A stretch of DNA of 63,299 nt, counting the filler, from Reticulomyxa filosa (Eukaryota > Protista > Foraminifera), in NCBI GenBank assembly GCA_000512085.1. It is 14 parts of 14 records of this genome, joined end to end, with 100 filler letters (N's around TTAATTAATTAA, not from the genome) between each part and the next. Parts side by side here need not be neighbours in the genome. Positions count along the whole stretch, not along the records: positions 4,950 to 10,851 come from ASPP01005087.1; 13 more parts are not named here. One strand, given 5' to 3'. Shown here in pieces: positions 4,950 through 10,951 of this stretch (positions are counted from its first letter, which is position 1; every line of letters starts with the position of its first letter). The translations under genes and the position numbers were made by a program. The notes under the pieces are model-generated. The model was given only the letters and a program-made list of their open reading frames with translations. It was not told the DNA's origin and did no database searches.

Positions 4950-5018
4950 ATATATATATATATATATTATATGGATACCTTATTTGATACAATGATCATA
5001 TTGACAACACGAAAATAG

Positions 5019-8000
5019 GCAAATCGGGAGTGGTAAAGTATGTGGGAAAGACCGAATTTAGCCAAGCAGAGCCAATGATCGGAGTGGAGATGGACGTGTG
5101 GAGTGCGAATGCTCATGACGGGTCACTCAATGGAATGCGATACTTTGACGCGACTCCTGGAAAAGGGTATTTTATTCGAAAAGAGTCATATATGTCTTTG
5201 AAAGACATAATCGGCGATAGTGACGTGGACCATATTTTGAAGCAAGGATCTATGGCCTTTGAAAACTTTGATGTGGCCAATTTGGGCACGTACTTTGAAG
5301 AGCAGGATTATGTGACCACAAGTGACGGGCACAAAGGAAAAGTGGTATTTATTGGCAAAGTCAAGTTTTCGCCCCAAGAAATGGCGGGTTTGATCCTCGA
5401 CGAGTGGGATCCAAACGGGCACAACGGCAACGTGCGTGGAGAAAAGTACTTTGACGCTCCGGAAGGATATGGCTGGTTTGTCCCGGTCGACAAAGTCACG
5501 GAAAAAATTTCAGAGGAGCCCGAAGCCGAAACTGAAAAGAAGGCGACCACCGAGAAGCAAAAGTCCAAAAATAAAAATCGCATCAAAGTCGAAGTCGGAC
5601 AGCGTGTTCAAATCAAAGGAGGAATGCGCGGATTGGTCAGCTTTTATGGCAAAACAGACTTTTCGGATAACAAGTGGATCGGATTGCAGTTGGACAATTG
5701 GCATTACAACGCTCACGACGGCACTGTGAACAACAAGAGATACTTTACCGCCGGCAAAGGTCGCGGATTCTTTGTTCGACCAGAAAGCATCTCCGTAGTG
5801 ATGCGTCAAGACGAAGAAAAAAAGATCACAGAATCGTTGTCGGTGATGCCGGAAATTGGTGATCGAGTACGAACAGTACGTGGAAAGACTGGAGTTGTTC
5901 GATTCATTGGACCCGTGGACTTTTCAAGAGGTGTGCTGATTGGAGTCGAGCTGGACCGATGGAGTCCCAATGCAACCGATGGCAGTGTCAATGGCGTTCC
6001 TTATTTTGATTGTATGTGGGGACGTGGTTATTTCACGTGCCTATCCAACCTCATCGAAAACTTGGGATCTGCGCTGCAATCATCAACACAAGAAACCACT
6101 GAGCCGGATAACAAAGCTGACTCTCAAGACGACTCGCTTCATTTCAAATTCGGAGATAAAATTCAGTTGTCACATCGCAAAATTGGTGTTATTCGTTTCA
6201 TTGGAACCACCGAGGCAACTGGTACTGATGAAATTATTGGCATTGAGTTTTGTGTTATTTCTTGTTTGTAATAACAAATAAATAAATATGTATTGTTTGT
6301 TATTATTATTATTATTATTATTTATAATTAATTTGTTTTTGTTTTTGTTTTTGTTTTTGTGATCAAGGCTCGATTCGTGGGATGTAAATGCAAAAGATGG
6401 AAGCATAGGCGAAAAAGTGCTGTTTGATGTATCCTATGGCCGTGGATATTTTGCACGCAGAAAAGCAATCTCAAATGCAGTGAGGACTCGCATAAAGAAG
6501 GACAGCTATGCGAAATTGAAAGGCTTGCAAAGTATGACGAAATTCAATGGCCGAGTGGTAAAGACGATTGAGTACGTACAAGAAAAACAACGATGGAAGG
6601 TGAAATTGTATAACAATAATAAAAAGAAAGAAAAGAAACACTTGGGAGTGAAGGAAGAAAACCTGACCCCATTGTTTGACTGGGAAATACCATCGGATTC
6701 TGCCCACGGACGATTAACCCGAATGCCTTTAATCGGAGACCATGTTCGAACAAGAGACGGTGCGATTGGAACCGTTCGTTTCTTAGGAAAAACCGATTTT
6801 TCCAAAGATCAAATCGCTATTGGCATTGAGTTGGATGAGTGGCAGCCCTCTGCAAATAATGGCAGTGTGAATGGCAAGGAATTTTTCAAATGCAAAGACG
6901 GATACGGATACTTTGCAAGTCTGGACGAATTGGAAGCAAACTTGGGTCAGTACGACGGAGCCCAGCCTCAAGCAGCAAAGCCCACACTCAAAGTCGGTGA
7001 CAAAGTAAAACTGGCTCGTGGCAAAATTGGCGAGGTCAGATTCATTGGAAAGACCGACTTTAGCAAAGGCGAGGAAGTTATCGGTTTGGAGTTGGCTCAA
7101 TGGACACAGGGGGCCCATGACGGAAAAGTCAATGGCAGAGAGTATTTTAAGGCAAGACATGGTCGTGGTTATTTCACTCGAAAAGAATCGGTTATGAATT
7201 TGGTGTTGCCCGAAGGAGGACTGGAACAAGAGAATCAGGTCGGTCAAAGTGCAGTTCAAATTCGACGTGAGATCAACAAGATCAAGAGGACACTTCGTCA
7301 AATTGAAATATTCGAAATGCGTCTCCAAAAGGGACAACAGCTGCAACCCCAACAACTTGAGCAAATTAAGGAGAAAGCAGACTTGATCAAAAAGCTGCAA
7401 CAATTGGAAATAGAGGCGTCGGACGCCGGCATTCACGATAAACAGAAGCAAGAAGAAAATACAAAGAAACGCCAGAACTTGTTGGAAAGAAAAGCAACAG
7501 TAGATTTGACGTCGAAAAAATGGACAGTGTCAGTTCAAGTGGATGATATGGTCAAATTGGAAAATGGAGATACTGGTGTTGTGAAATGGATTGGAAAAAT
7601 TCCATTTCTCGCAGACGAAGTGATTGGAATATTGATGGATCAAGGCAATCCAAATTATCACAATGGAGAATTGGATGGAAAAGAGTTTTTCAAAGCACCT
7701 AATCATCGAGGTTATTTTGCTTTGCCCGAAGAAATTGAGACCAATATGGGCTCCACGAGATCCACTGGCCGACGCAAATCAGTCAATGCCACAGAAGAGT
7801 CCAAACTTCATGAAACCATCAAAATTGGTGATAAAGTCCATACAAGCGAAGGAGAAGGCACGGTGGTTTGGAAAGGAACGGTCCCCTCCGGAGAAAGCGG
7901 AGAAAAGTCTGAGAATGTGCTCGGAATTGAATTGAACAACTTTAGTGGCAATTGCAACAGCGGAGTCAATTACTTTAATGCGAAAAAGGGGCACGCCATG

Positions 8001-10846
8001 CTCGCACGCACCCAATCTATTCAACTCGATTCGCTGCCCGATTTCGGAGCGGAACAAGATACTATTCAAGTGTTGGTTGGAGATCGAGTTCGAACTGAAA
8101 AAGGACGCACTGGAGTTTTGAAAGAAAACAACAACAACAATAATAATAATAATAATACATATGTGTACGTATATAATTAATTCTCAAATCAAATAGGTGG
8201 TTAGATTTGTTGGTCCAGTACATTTCAAAGATGAGGAAATGGTCGGCATCGAATTGGATGAATGGTCATTGAATGGAAATGACGGCAGCGTAGATGGGAA
8301 GAGGTACTTTGACTGTCGTGACTCAAGAGGCTACTTCTGTGCGAAGCGCCATATCGCGGAAAATATGGGCCCGACGTCATTGCAGAGTGCAAACGCATCC
8401 AAAGGCGTGGGAATAGCCGACGATGACGATTGGATTGACCCAAGAAACAAAAATATCAAAGCTGGCGACCGTGTTGAACTGGATCGGGGTCGTAAAGGTG
8501 TTGTGAAATGGATCGGCGTGACCGACTTTAGTCGCGGCGAAGAAATGTTGGGAATTGAACTCGATGATTGGTGGATCAATGGTCATGATGGAAGCCAAGA
8601 TGGGCAGAAATATTTCCAAGTTCACTACAAAAAAAAAACAAAAAAAAATGGTCTCCTTACTTTGTATTATCATATTTGTGTGTGTGTTTCAATACAGTGT
8701 GCCGAAAACCGTGGATACTTTGCTCGTCGACGTTCCGTGGCAAATATAATAGTGAAAGACGTGAAGGAGGACCCCGTAAGCAAAGAGATAAACCGACGAA
8801 AGAAACGAATATTCCGACTTCGAAAACATTTGCAAGACATTGAAAAGTATGAAAAACGCTTGGCCAATAAAGAATCATTGCATAAAAATCAAATCGAAAA
8901 GATTGGACGAAAAGACCAATTCAAAGAAGAATTGCACCATTTGGAAACAGCCCCTCCTCCAACTCTGCAAGACTTGACTCGTGAAAAACAATACGAGGAA
9001 GATACTCGACCAGTGAACGGAAGTGATGACGAAATGTCTTTGGATGATATCAAAAAAGCGATTGAAGACAAAGAACGAGAAAGCGAGGAAGAAGCAGAAG
9101 TGAATGAAGATGAGGACGAAGACGGAGACGAAAACAACAAAGCCGAACACGGACGTGCAAAAAGCATGGTGGTGAATTTCGTTGACGTGGCTGTCGGCGA
9201 TCGAGTTCGAATCTTGGGAAACAAAACAGGCGTCGTGCGCTATCTTGGCGATGTGGAGTTTTCCAATGAAAAACTTATTGGAATTGAGTTGGATAGCTGG
9301 CATCCTAACGCAACCGACGGAACTGTGCGAGGAAAGACTTATTTCAAAGTTACTTTCAATTTATTTGTTTATTTATTCTTGTCTTGTTTTAATTTCATCT
9401 TGTTGCATTCTAGTGCGCTCCCGGATACGGATTTTTTGCAAGATACAACTTCGTTGTAGAGAATCTAGGATCAGTGGTATGATTTATTTATTTGTTTTTA
9501 GGAAAAAAAAAAGTCCTTGATTATTGTTGAATTTTGTTTTGATGTTGGAAAGCAAACTGATGGCGGCAATGACAACGACCTTGATGATGAAGACGAGACA
9601 ACACCACCTCCGCAAGCGCCATTACCGAAAATCCACTTCAAGATTGGAGACTACGTGAAGTTATCTCGAGGGAAATCAGGAGTGGTAAAGTACATTGGAG
9701 AAACCGATTTCACGAAAGGAGAAATTATCGGCTTGGAGTTAGATACATGGAACCCTTGCGGACACAATGGCACAGTGCGGGGAAAGAAATATTTTGAAGC
9801 CAACGTAGGTCGTGGTCATTTCACGCGAAGAGGCTCCATTTCTCAAGTAGTGATTCCTTTGGTGAAGCCATTGGATCCGAAAACCTCCAATACGACCTTC
9901 CAATTGAAACCATTCAAACCCGACGATCGCATAGCTTTCGTCAATGGAGGGGCGACAGGTGTCATCAAATACATTGGTTATCCTCCTTTTGCCGAGGGCG
10001 AAGTTTTTGGCATTGAATTGGATGAGTGGTCCGCGAACGCTCACGATGGCAGCGCCAACGGTGATATCATCTTTGACACGTTACCTGGACGTGGCATCTT
10101 TGCAAGACGAGACGAAATCGAAAAGTTTGATCCAGAGAAGAAGAAACTGGAAGAGGCAAAGGTGCAATTGAAAATTGGAGACAAAGTCAATTTAACCAAG
10201 AATCGTTCCGGAGTGGTCAAATATATTGGCTCGGACCACCTCACTGATCAAGAGATCATTGGCATTGAATTAGGTTTGTTTTTTTTTTTTTTTGAAACAA
10301 TTTTTTTAATGTGTAATGCTATTTTATCTTTTCTTTATAGACGTATGGATTCCTGGTGCTCATGATGGCTTGTACAACCAATACCGCTACTTTCAAGTTT
10401 TGTTTTTGATCTTGTTTTTGTTGCGCAATATTTGTTTGAAGTCAAAAGACGTGTATCAATTGAGAGTGACTTGACTTGAATGTAAAATGTAGTGTCCCAA
10501 AGGAAGAGGTATTTTCGCCAAACGAAGCTCAATTGTCACGATTCAATCGGTTCCGGAAGTGGAAACCAGAGCAACAGATGACAGCGACGACGAAAGGGAG
10601 GAAAACAAATACAGTATTGGACAACGAGTGCAAATTGACATGGGAAAAAAAGGAGTTAATCTGACTTTTTTTTTTTTTTTTTTCCAAACGAGGTACAATG
10701 CTAAACTTTGAAATTTGGAAAAATAGACAATACGATACATTGGAAAAGATACGAAAGGAGAGGAAGTATACGGCATTGAGTTAGATGAAAAAATACCTAA
10801 AGGTACCGATGGGCAGCACAATCAAATGAGATACTTCACGTGCAGG
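5019..10846 (+). CDS. Giant multi-CAP-Gly protein (at least 16 CAP-Gly domains; partial at both contig ends; multi-exon)
   Basis: The unit G-x-V-[RK]-[FY]-I-G-x-x-x-F...IG[IL]ELDxW...[HNT][DN]G[ST]VxGxxYF...G[RY]G[YF]F recurs 16 times after removing GT-AG introns (e.g. about 6247-6367 and 8620-8697). Confidence 0.93.
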
Positions 10847-10951
10847 TTTGTNNNNNNNNNNNNNNNNNNNNNNNNNNNNNNNNNNNNNNNNNNNNTTAAT
10901 TAATTAANNNNNNNNNNNNNNNNNNNNNNNNNNNNNNNNNNNNNNNNNNNN

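What the first reader, a model, noticed from the sequence alone, without database searches (positions are those of the whole stretch)
5019..10846. Giant protein with at least 16 tandem CAP-Gly domains, a candidate multivalent microtubule scaffold
Seen: 16 CAP-Gly units in an apparently intact spliced ORF that is open at both contig ends. Known: characterised CAP-Gly proteins (p150Glued, CLIP-170, TBCB/TBCE, CYLD, CLIP3/4) carry only 1-3. Inference: a multivalent tubulin/EB-tail binder that could bundle or remodel microtubules. This is relevant if the host is a foraminiferan, whose reticulopodial microtubules are very dynamic and form helical filaments.
Basis: partly seen in the sequence, partly recalled or inferred. 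Interest (0 to 1): 0.82.

Follow-up and report, generated by a model that had tools for sequence, protein, structure and literature searches.

The report
Giant foraminiferal poly-CAP-Gly protein fragment
This Reticulomyxa filosa contig holds the middle of one very large gene encoding 16 tandem CAP-Gly domains, far more than the 1-3 in studied proteins, but every copy lacks the lysine used to grip tubulin tails, so its presumed microtubule role is untested.

Summary
The piece is a whole 5,902-bp Reticulomyxa filosa contig. Nine GT-AG exons on the + strand (5019-10845) encode 1,720 stop-free codons with 16 CAP-Gly units. The gene is cut at both ends.

GenBank splits it into RFI_05929 and RFI_05930. 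That split halves unit 10. A paralogue model and a Nonionella stella transcriptome protein both run straight across the junction, so one gene is far more likely.

The array is not unique. R. filosa has colinear, diverged paralogues with about 27 and 13 units, all under purifying selection. Every named relative is foraminiferal. In 1.84 billion representative proteins, only three others reach 13 or more units.

The canonical GKNDG ligand motif is absent from all 16 units, replaced by W-x-x-N-A-H-D-G. Unit net charge runs from -6 to +6. Binding to tubulin or EB tails is therefore an untested inference.

The paralogue tail carries a canonical-like CAP-Gly, a Cys-rich segment and an EF-hand.

Verdict: a real, undescribed, lineage-specific variant of a known domain family. 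No function has been shown.

The parts
5019..6246 (+). Exon A. Codons run 5021-6244, with a split codon at each end. It holds units 1-4 and the N-terminal half of unit 5. Upstream, 4950-5018 is an AT-rich intron tail ending in the only AG (5017-5018).
   Evidence: The intron sits at the same unit position in L001 and L002.
6247..6367 (+). Intron 1 (121 nt, GTTTTG..AG, GC 0.15), inside unit 5. It contains a (TTTGTT)n microsatellite at 6332-6360.
   Evidence: GenBank's model P0001 uses the same splice. The position is conserved in L001 and L002.
6368..8114 (+). Exon B (codons from 6369). It holds the C-terminal half of unit 5, the SH3-like insert, units 6 and 7, helical spacer 1, units 8 and 9, and the first 14 residues of unit 10.
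8115..8196 (+). Intron 2 (82 nt, GTTTTG..AG), inside unit 10. GenBank ends RFI_05929 by reading through this donor, and starts RFI_05930 at an internal Met downstream.
   Evidence: Paralogue L001 has an intron at the same place and phase (7050-7112), and its GenBank model splices across it. Nonionella protein P0173 is contiguous here, residue 127 to 128.
8197..8619 (+). Exon C: the rest of unit 10 and the first 55 residues of unit 11.
8620..8697 (+). Intron 3 (78 nt, in frame and free of stops, GTTCAC..AG, GC 0.27). GenBank's RFI_05930 retains it as 26 residues that break unit 11.
   Evidence: L001 and Nonionella P0173 have no insert at this place.
8698..9348 (+). Exon D: the end of unit 11, helical and acidic spacer 2, and the first 54 residues of unit 12.
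9414..9476 (+). Exon E (21 codons): the C-terminal end of unit 12. GenBank's RFI_05930 skips it. The flanking introns are 9349-9413 and 9477-9552.
   Evidence: It is contiguous with D and F in P0173, which runs 458, 459-479, then F.
9553..10273 (+). Exon F: an acidic linker, units 13 and 14, and the first 35 residues of unit 15.
   Evidence: It is 67% identical to P0173 and 73% to L001.
10341..10396 (+). Exon G (18 codons plus a split codon): the middle of unit 15. The flanking introns are 10274-10340 and 10397-10492.
10493..10654 (+). Exon H: the end of unit 15, an acidic linker, and the first 17 residues of unit 16. Intron 8 follows at 10655-10726.
10727..10845 (+). Exon I: residues 16-56 of unit 16. 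A GT donor at 10846-10847 follows, then the piece ends, so the gene continues beyond it.
   Evidence: It is 89% identical to L001 9653-9763.
5021..5191 (+). CAP-Gly unit 1, which lacks its N-terminal end. The motif is ANAHDG.
5297..5497 (+). CAP-Gly unit 2 (PNGHNG, net charge -5).
5588..5791 (+). CAP-Gly unit 3 (YNAHDG, net charge +4). It is the only unit that keeps the canonical Trp before the G-x-x-L-D segment.
5849..6052 (+). CAP-Gly unit 4 (PNATDG).
6143..6470 (+). CAP-Gly unit 5, in two pieces (6143-6244 and 6369-6470) split by intron 1. The motif is VNAKDG.
6471..6725 (+). An 85-residue basic insert (net charge +12) that folds as a small five-stranded SH3-like barrel of the KOW/Tudor type. 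It is conserved in paralogues and in many relatives.
   Evidence: AF2 gives pLDDT 77.7. Foldseek's best E-value is 4e-3. VIA gives Z 8.6, rmsd 1.5 A over 56 residues, to the human DSIF KOW6-KOW7 structure 5ohq, which is borderline.
6726..6932 (+). CAP-Gly unit 6 (PSANNG, net charge -3).
6987..7193 (+). CAP-Gly unit 7 (QGAHDG, net charge +6).
7194..7532 (+). Spacer 1 (113 residues). Its core, about 7242-7403, is K/E/Q/L-rich with a 3.5-residue hydrophobic periodicity, so it is probably an amphipathic helix or coiled coil.
   Evidence: 14 of 2,000 shuffles reach the observed periodicity. It is 48-49% identical in L001 and L002. Pfam finds no family.
7533..7736 (+). CAP-Gly unit 8 (PNYHNG, net charge -6, family Trp replaced by Gly).
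7818..8021 (+). CAP-Gly unit 9, the most degenerate unit. It has a 4-residue insertion and a 4-residue deletion, and its motif is GNCNSG.
   Evidence: The family HMM gives i-E 1e-18.
8073..8355 (+). CAP-Gly unit 10, in two pieces (8073-8114 and 8197-8355) split by intron 2. The motif is LNGNDG.
8455..8739 (+). CAP-Gly unit 11, in two pieces (8455-8619 and 8698-8739) split by intron 3. The motif is INGHDG.
8740..9186 (+). Spacer 2 (149 residues, net charge -11). A helical core at about 8767-8937 is followed by an acidic D/E-rich stretch.
   Evidence: 26 of 2,000 shuffles reach the observed periodicity. It is 50-55% identical in L001, P0043 and RFI_09516.
9187..9464 (+). CAP-Gly unit 12, in two pieces (9187-9348 and 9414-9464) split by intron 4. 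The motif is PNATDG.
9637..9840 (+). CAP-Gly unit 13 (PCGHNG, net charge +5).
9913..10119 (+). CAP-Gly unit 14 (ANAHDG, net charge -6).
10168..10534 (+). CAP-Gly unit 15, in three pieces (10168-10272, 10343-10396 and 10493-10534) split by introns 6 and 7.
   Evidence: The pieces are contiguous in P0173.
10604..10843 (+). CAP-Gly unit 16, in two pieces (10604-10654 and 10727-10843). Its C-terminal end lies beyond the piece. The motif is PKGTDG.

Best explanation
Shown: the piece is the middle of a single Reticulomyxa filosa gene of nine exons that encodes 16 tandem CAP-Gly domains. The domains are interrupted by one SH3-like barrel and two helical spacers. The gene belongs to a foraminiferal family of giant poly-CAP-Gly proteins. 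The fullest paralogue (contig L001) has about 27 units, followed by one canonical-like CAP-Gly, a Cys-rich zinc-finger-like segment and an EF-hand region. The array and the order of its units predate the split of the R. filosa paralogues and the Reticulomyxa-Nonionella split, and they are kept under purifying selection. The units are a distinct CAP-Gly subtype. The GKNDG loop is replaced by W-x-x-(N/S)-(A/G)-(H/N/T)-(D/N)-G with a one-residue insertion. The canonical Trp is replaced by an aliphatic residue.

Inferred: the protein is a beads-on-a-string, multivalent scaffold of the microtubule cytoskeleton. Many weak CAP-Gly contacts would add up to high avidity, for tubulin or for tubulin-associated C-terminal tails, through a remodelled groove. 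The helical spacers would allow self-association and hence cross-linking or bundling. The C-terminal EF-hand module seen in the paralogue and in Nonionella would give calcium control. I put the anatomy and the single-gene reading at about 0.95. I put the microtubule or tubulin ligand at about 0.5.
For: Identity and anatomy. Single gene: the GenBank split halves unit 10. Paralogue model RFI_31450 splices across the same intron position and phase. Nonionella stella protein P0173 (EukProt) is contiguous across junctions B/C, C/D, D/E, E/F, F/G, G/H and H/I. PMC8153729 describes Trinity transcriptome assemblies for this species. Family: window units map one-to-one onto L001 3980-9769 at 53-89% amino-acid identity per exon, and onto L002 at 60-67%. 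All named relatives are foraminiferal. Selection: pS 0.72-0.83 against pN 0.07-0.25. CAP-Gly homology to CLIP-170 and p150Glued: E about 1e-18. These are microtubule and EB binders. Helical periodicity of the spacers. Tail module in the paralogue and in Nonionella, including EF-hand and RPEL.
Against: None of the 16 units has the Lys of GKNDG, and 0 of 43 units in arrays of 10 or more have it. In CLIP-170 the K and N of that motif and a basic groove mediate EEY/F and microtubule binding (PMC9062740). Four units are clearly acidic (-3 to -6), and most linkers are acidic. That is unfavourable for binding acidic tubulin tails. There is no R. filosa RNA evidence, no localisation and no binding data. 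The tails of R. filosa tubulin and EB1 could not be examined here. The two-unit AF2 model was low confidence, so the groove geometry is unknown.
Confidence: 0.6

Rival explanations
1. The array is a scaffold or buffer for soluble tubulin rather than a lattice binder. Like the CAP-Gly tubulin chaperones TBCB and TBCE, each unit would hold a tubulin dimer or oligomer. The protein would then store or carry tubulin, for example helical-filament material, for rapid reassembly in reticulopodia.
For: TBCB and TBCE are among the CAP-Gly relatives found (1whg, 4b6m, 9m1k). Foraminiferal microtubules interconvert with helical filaments (PMC4990898). The very high valency and conserved unit order fit stoichiometric loading.
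Against: The best profile matches are CLIP-170 and p150Glued, not TBCB or TBCE. No ubiquitin-like or LRR domains of the chaperones are present. The lack of the GKNDG lysine applies equally to this reading.
Confidence: 0.15
2. The units have changed ligand and do not bind tubulin at all. Like CYLD's third CAP-Gly domain, which binds NEMO, they would bind other peptides. The protein would then be a multivalent adaptor for non-tubulin partners such as motors, actin regulators or membrane cargo.
For: The canonical motif is lost in 16 of 16 units, and a new conserved Trp appears. Unit charges are mixed. An embedded SH3-like barrel is conserved. The Nonionella family member P0040 carries RPEL (G-actin-binding) repeats and an EF-hand.
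Against: The rest of the CAP-Gly core is well conserved, including the G-x-x-Y-F and R-G-Y-F segments and the Phe of the D-F-S-K-G segment. The family is so far confined to a lineage famous for its microtubule specialisations. No alternative ligand is indicated by any result.
Confidence: 0.2
3. The GenBank annotation is right: there are two separate genes, RFI_05929 and RFI_05930.
For: The deposited models. No R. filosa RNA could be laid on the junction.
Against: Both models start at internal Met codons inside a CAP-Gly domain. RFI_05929 ends only because it reads through a GT donor into an AT-rich intron. The split leaves two half-domains that a GT-AG intron joins into a complete unit 10. The paralogue model and a Nonionella transcript are contiguous at this exact point. 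RFI_05930 also retains intron sequence and skips exon E.
Confidence: 0.04
4. It is a decaying repeat, a pseudogene or an assembly artefact.
For: The contig is short, and the R. filosa assembly is fragmented. Unit 9 is degenerate.
Against: There are 1,720 stop-free codons across nine exons. pN is far below pS against two paralogues. The units are only 24-62% identical to each other, and there are no DNA tandem repeats. Orthologous transcripts exist in Nonionella and Bolivina.
Confidence: 0.01

Closest known systems
CLIP-170 / CLIP1 (restin) and CLIP-115
   Same: These give the best solved-structure matches of the unit profile (E 1.6e-18). They have tandem CAP-Gly domains followed by coiled coil. 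The concept is shared: more than one CAP-Gly raises avidity for microtubules.
   Different: CLIP-170 has 2 units against at least 16 here. CLIP-170 has GKNDG, the canonical Trp and a basic groove, with Ser-rich basic linkers (PMC9062740). Here the Lys is absent in all units, the Trp is relocated, charges are mixed and linkers are acidic. No zinc knuckles are seen in the piece.
Dynactin p150Glued CAP-Gly
   Same: The profile match is strong (E 6e-18). It is the reference structure for EB1 and tubulin EEY/F recognition (my own knowledge).
   Different: It has a single N-terminal CAP-Gly on a dynactin subunit with a canonical GKNDG. None of the dynactin architecture is present here.
CYLD and CLIP4 (three CAP-Gly domains each)
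   Same: They have the highest unit count among characterised proteins (my own knowledge). CYLD shows that CAP-Gly domains with a deviant motif can bind non-tubulin ligands.
   Different: They have 3 units, and other catalytic or ankyrin domains. The profile matches are weaker (E 1e-11 to 1e-4).
R. filosa RFI_31450 plus its neighbouring model (contig ASPP01027642, L001), RFI_03278 (L002) and RFI_09516; Nonionella stella EP01083 P266701 and P282857; Bolivina argentea transcripts
   Same: These are true family members. Units and spacers are colinear, intron positions are shared, and they have the same W..NAHDG motif, SH3-like insert and helical spacers.
   Different: All are uncharacterised hypothetical proteins. 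L001 is longer (about 27 units) and shows the C-terminal module that this piece does not reach. L001 lacks intron 3.

Membership tests
CAP-Gly domain (Pfam PF01302) | A sequence match to the family profile above the curated cut-off (26.5 bits) | tested here: met
   36.7-221.5 bits per exon; 381.9 and 250.3 bits for the two GenBank models. E 1e-18 to CLIP-170 and p150Glued structures.
CAP-Gly domain (Pfam PF01302) | The conserved GKNDG loop that forms the EEY/F-binding groove | tested here: not met
   0 of 16 units have G-K-(N/H)-D-G. The loop is (N/S)(A/G)(H/N/T)(D/N)G with one extra residue and a preceding Trp. Only the final D/N-G is kept.
CAP-Gly domain (Pfam PF01302) | Hydrophobic cavity residues: the Phe of the D-F segment, the Trp before G-x-x-L-D, and the aromatic pair near the C-terminal end | tested here: inconclusive
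   the Phe and the Y-F are kept in most units. The Trp is kept only in unit 3 and is aliphatic elsewhere. A new Trp lies four residues before the loop in most units. Which residues line the cavity is from my own knowledge of the p150Glued and CLIP-170 structures.
CAP-Gly domain (Pfam PF01302) | The CAP-Gly three-dimensional fold | tested here: inconclusive
   the two-unit AF2 model had mean pLDDT 43.7 from a six-sequence alignment, too low to use. The fold is inferred from sequence homology only.
CAP-Gly domain (Pfam PF01302) | Binding to C-terminal EEY/F tails of alpha-tubulin, EB1 or CLIP-170 | not testable with these tools
   This needs peptide-binding or co-sedimentation assays.
CLIP-170-type +TIP | Two N-terminal CAP-Gly domains with basic Ser-rich linkers, a long central coiled coil, and C-terminal zinc knuckles with an EEY/F tail | tested here: not met
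   There are 16 units with mostly acidic linkers. Only two helical cores of about 55 residues are seen. Pfam found no zinc knuckle. The C-terminus is off the piece. The paralogue tail has a different Cys-rich segment and an EF-hand.
Foraminiferal giant poly-CAP-Gly family (unnamed; RFI_31450, RFI_03278, Nonionella P0173 and P0040) | A colinear order of units, insert and spacers, shared intron positions, and the W..NAHDG-type loop | tested here: met
   one-to-one correspondence of the 16 units with L001 units 10-25. Seven of eight internal intron positions are shared with L001. Colinear exons are 53-89% identical.

The most novel reading that the evidence does not exclude
Foraminifera evolved a private class of giant microtubule-associated proteins. 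These are arrays of 16 to 27 or more re-tooled CAP-Gly domains whose remodelled groove recognises the lineage's own divergent tubulins. A C-terminal EF-hand module would switch them with calcium, and RPEL motifs would link them to actin in some members. Such proteins would drive the bundling, sliding and rapid microtubule-to-helical-filament interconversion that make reticulopodia unique.
Probability: 0.12. Interest if true: 0.85.

Novelty: new variant of a known kind. Interest (0 to 1): 0.62.

Why it matters
Reticulopodial microtubules assemble, slide, bundle and convert to helical filaments at rates seen nowhere else, and the proteins responsible are unknown. This family gives concrete, clonable candidates. 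It is so far specific to the lineage, ancient, under selection and expressed in at least two other foraminifera. Its unit count is far beyond that of any characterised CAP-Gly protein. It is also a natural experiment in CAP-Gly ligand recognition, because the whole array has swapped the GKNDG lysine and relocated the cavity Trp. On the practical side, it shows that the public R. filosa annotation fragments these genes and retains introns, so domain counts taken from that annotation underestimate them.

Tried and rejected
- **RNA evidence:** The look-up of sequencing runs listed no run. "None was listed" does not mean none exists.
- **Literature:** no paper in the searched library holds CAP-Gly together with Reticulomyxa or foraminifer. 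The R. filosa genome paper (Curr Biol 2014) is not held.
- **Pfam on the spacers and linkers:** only sub-threshold noise.
- **Similarity between the two helical spacers:** not significant by BLASTP (E 2.7), although by eye both open with a similar basic I-x-R-x-x-x-K/R..L..I-E motif.
- **Two-unit AF2 model (units 13-14):** mean pLDDT 43.7. It is unusable, so nothing can be said on whether neighbouring units pack rigidly.
- **Foldseek on the insert-domain model:** no match at E 0.001 or better. VIA-align gave a borderline Z of 8.6, so only the fold class is named.
- **First motif count:** the count by alignment column mis-scored the canonical-like GKHDG of the L001 tail. It was replaced by a register-free pattern.
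- **Origin of the environmental multi-unit proteins:** contigs for P0004, P0041 and P0046 were fetched, but the sample names do not give a taxon.
- **Same gene in pieces?** I considered whether L001 and L002 are other pieces of the same gene. This is rejected: they overlap the window colinearly at only 65-77% nucleotide identity.
- **Joined model:** In one search a script line concatenated the exon translations into an unused variable by mistake; it was never output or used.
- **Display quirk:** tools that translate with table 11 show a leading GTG as M, for example the first residue of exon C. The residue is Val.

Full report
**What the piece is.** The range 4950-10851 is an entire 5,902-bp contig of the foraminiferan Reticulomyxa filosa. 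A search with one exon returned a 100% identical GenBank protein, RFI_05929, and a second model, RFI_05930, both on a 5,902-bp contig.

**Gene structure.** The + strand carries nine exons:
- A 5019-6246
- B 6368-8114
- C 8197-8619
- D 8698-9348
- E 9414-9476
- F 9553-10273
- G 10341-10396
- H 10493-10654
- I 10727-10845

Each exon translates without a stop, 1,720 codons in all. The eight internal introns are 65-121 nt long and all are GT..AG. Their GC is 0.22 against 0.45 in the exons. Upstream of 5019 there is only an AT-rich intron tail, whose sole AG is at 5017-5018. After 10845 comes a GT donor and then the contig end. The gene therefore runs off both ends. The minus strand shows nothing.

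**The 16 units.** Pfam CAP_GLY (PF01302) matches every exon long enough to hold a unit, with E-values from 8e-67 to 4e-9. It finds 9 and 6 stretches in the two GenBank models, and exon I adds the sixteenth. phmmer and a family HMM, run on the exons kept apart, place all 16 units.
- Nine units lie in a single exon.
- Units 5, 10, 11, 12 and 15 are split by introns.
- Unit 1 and unit 16 (the latter also split by intron 8) are cut by the piece edges.

The units are only 24-62% identical to each other. The only DNA tandem repeat is an intronic microsatellite. The array is therefore old and is not an assembly artefact.

**One gene or two?** GenBank annotates two genes, and both models look wrong.
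- RFI_05929 starts at an internal Met inside unit 1. It ends by reading through the donor at 8115 into the intron.
- RFI_05930 starts at an internal Met inside unit 10. It retains the in-frame 78-nt intron 3 as 26 residues inside unit 11, skips exon E, and retains part of intron 7.
- The boundary between the two models leaves two halves of unit 10. A GT-AG intron (8115-8196) joins those halves exactly.

Two independent comparisons support one gene.
- In the paralogous contig L001, an intron sits at the same position and phase (7050-7112). GenBank's own model there, RFI_31450, splices "...GCTG|VVRFVGPV..." across it.
- The Nonionella stella protein P0173 (EukProt) is contiguous at B/C, residue 127 to 128. 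It has no insert at C/D. It carries the equivalents of exons D, E, F, G, H and I in register. De novo Trinity transcriptome assemblies for this species and for Bolivina argentea are described in PMC8153729. That EukProt took its entries from those assemblies is my inference.

No R. filosa RNA run could be listed, so direct proof is missing. I put the single-gene reading at about 0.95.

**A family, not a one-off.** A profile of the units (A1) was run against 1.84 billion representative proteins. It gave 9,765 hits, nearly all with four units or fewer. Only three proteins other than this one have 13 or more units:

| Protein | Source | Units |
|---|---|---|
| RFI_31450 (P0035) | R. filosa | 23 stretches |
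| RFI_03278 (P0036) | R. filosa | 13 |
| P0037 | intronless ORF on a Tara marine metagenome scaffold | 13-14 |

Contig L001 carries about 27 units over two adjacent GenBank models. The window is colinear with L001 3980-9769, with a one-to-one match of its 16 units to L001 units 10-25, at 53-89% amino-acid identity per exon. It is colinear with L002 1760-4900 at 60-67%. Nucleotide identity of 65-77% rules out alleles or overlapping pieces of one gene.

Synonymous sites are saturated (pS 0.72-0.83) while pN is 0.07-0.25. The paralogues are therefore old and held under purifying selection. Seven of the eight internal intron positions are shared with L001. Intron 3 is absent there.

Every relative that carries a name is foraminiferal: R. 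filosa (also RFI_09516), Nonionella stella and Bolivina argentea. The unit order of units 9-16 is conserved between Reticulomyxa and Nonionella. The array is thus older than that split.

**What lies beyond the piece (from the paralogue).** Downstream of the region colinear with the window, L001 has three further features:
- one more ordinary unit;
- a last unit with the canonical Trp and a GKHDG loop;
- a Cys-rich C-x2-C segment, followed by a region 36-46% identical to the EF-hand part of the 2,194-residue Nonionella protein P0040.

P0040 also carries RPEL repeats (E 1.4e-8). Upstream, L001 has nine more units and is still incomplete. By analogy, the window's gene probably encodes far more than the 1,720 residues seen here. 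That is an inference.

**Other parts inside the piece.**
- *Insert between units 5 and 6.* This basic 85-residue segment (6471-6725) is conserved in paralogues and many relatives. AF2 folds it as a five-stranded barrel with pLDDT 77.7. The nearest structures are KOW, Tudor and SH3-like barrels: Foldseek E 4e-3, and VIA Z 8.6 with rmsd 1.5 A over 56 residues. These scores are borderline, so only the fold class is claimed.
- *Two long spacers.* They follow unit 7 (7194-7532) and unit 11 (8740-9186). Each has a core of about 55 residues with significant 3.5-residue hydrophobic periodicity: 14 and 26 of 2,000 shuffles reach the observed value. Each is conserved in the paralogues. They are probably amphipathic helices or coiled coils. 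Spacer 2 ends in an acidic run.
- *Linker between units 13 and 14.* The segment I-P-L-V-K-P is invariant in six orthologues and paralogues.

**The ligand site is not canonical.** Aligned to CLIP-170 and p150Glued, the loop "P-LGKNDG" reads "W-s-p-n-A-H-D-G" here, with one extra residue. None of the 16 units has the Lys. The Trp that precedes G-x-x-L-D in canonical domains survives only in unit 3.

A register-free count over all fetched proteins gave these frequencies of a GK(N/H..)DG loop:

| Units per protein | Units with the loop |
|---|---|
| 10 or more | 0 of 43 |
| 5-9 | 4 of 275 |
| 3-4 | 134 of 302 |

In CLIP-170 the GKNDG loop and the adjacent basic groove bind the EEY/F motif. The K and N of that loop are needed for EEY/F binding and microtubule tracking (PMC9062740). 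Here the net charge per unit runs from -6 to +6, and most linkers are acidic. The long arrays are thus built from a distinct CAP-Gly subtype whose ligand is unknown.

**Most likely mechanism.** I favour a beads-on-a-string multivalent scaffold of the microtubule system. Many weak contacts through a remodelled CAP-Gly groove would give avidity. The helical spacers would mediate self-association, and so cross-linking or bundling. The C-terminal canonical-like CAP-Gly, Cys-rich segment and EF-hand would supply targeting and calcium control.

Homology, architecture, conservation and lineage restriction are shown. The ligand, the oligomerisation and the calcium control are inferred. I put a tubulin or microtubule ligand at about 0.5.

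The rivals are:
- a soluble-tubulin buffer or carrier (0.15);
- a non-tubulin adaptor after a ligand switch (0.2);
- the two-gene annotation (0.04);
- a pseudogene or artefact (0.01).

**Novelty.** The proteins have sat in GenBank since the genome release as "hypothetical" or "CAP-Gly domain-containing". In the library searched, no paper combines CAP-Gly with Reticulomyxa or foraminifera. I could not read the genome paper itself. This is a new variant of a known kind: a known domain, in an unprecedented multiplicity, with a systematically altered binding loop, in a so far lineage-specific family.

**Limits and compliance.**
- The spliced model was searched exon by exon. 
- No read-laying was possible.

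Noticed in passing
window 6471-6725: A conserved, basic 85-residue SH3-like (KOW/Tudor-type) barrel is embedded between CAP-Gly units 5 and 6. It is also found in L001, L002, the Tara ORF and more than 15 other multi-CAP-Gly proteins. Its invariant residues include a W-K-V triplet and an N-G pair. Pfam has no family for it.
   Followed up: yes
L001 9900-12090 (R. filosa contig ASPP01027642): The paralogue tail has a last CAP-Gly with a canonical-like GKHDG loop and Trp. It is followed by a Cys-rich C-x2-C zinc-finger-like segment and an EF-hand-like region. The tail is colinear with Nonionella protein P0040, which also has RPEL (G-actin-binding) repeats. This hints at calcium control and an actin link for the family.
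   Followed up: partly
window 8115-8196, 8620-8697, 9349-9552, 10397-10492: The GenBank models RFI_05929 and RFI_05930 are mis-built. They have internal-Met starts inside domains, read-through of a donor, a retained in-frame intron, a skipped 21-codon exon E, and a partly retained intron 7. The neighbouring-model split on L001 (8226/8398) looks like the same kind of error, at the unit-12 equivalent.
   Followed up: yes
window 8620-8697 versus L001 about 7536/7537: Intron 3 is present in the window gene but absent from the L001 paralogue and from the intronless Tara ORF. Three units (11, 12 and 15) have an intron at the same place in the domain, just before the Cys that follows Y-F-x. This suggests either that units duplicated with their intron or that introns were gained repeatedly at a proto-splice site.
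   Followed up: partly
window 9853-9870: The linker between units 13 and 14 contains I-P-L-V-K-P. It is invariant across R. filosa paralogues and the Nonionella and Bolivina proteins, although other linkers vary freely. It may be a docking motif or a rigid inter-domain joint.
   Followed up: no
window 7242-7300 and 8767-8830: Both helical spacers open with a similar basic motif, I-(R/N)-R-x-x-x-(K/R)-x-x-x-L-(R/Q)-x-I-E-x-(F/Y)-E-x-R-L. Each follows a unit that ends in R-G-Y-F-x-R-x-x-S-V-x-N. This suggests an ancient duplicated unit-plus-helix block. BLASTP on the spacers alone is not significant (E 2.7).
   Followed up: partly
L004 (Logan ERR6349722), L006 (ENA ERZ26695579): A different kind of multi-CAP-Gly protein occurs in environmental assemblies of unknown taxon (P0041 with 8 units, P0046 with 7 units). 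It keeps the canonical Trp in every unit but mostly lacks the Lys and the family Trp. Arrays of 7-8 units therefore seem to have arisen more than once.
   Followed up: partly
L003 452-5536 (Tara scaffold TARA_SAMEA6035044_METAG-scaffold_15857): An apparently complete, intronless 1,694-residue ORF with 13-14 units and the same SH3-like insert. It is about 40% identical and colinear with window exons A and B. It is probably a marine foraminiferan or close relative, and would be useful as a full-length reference.
   Followed up: partly
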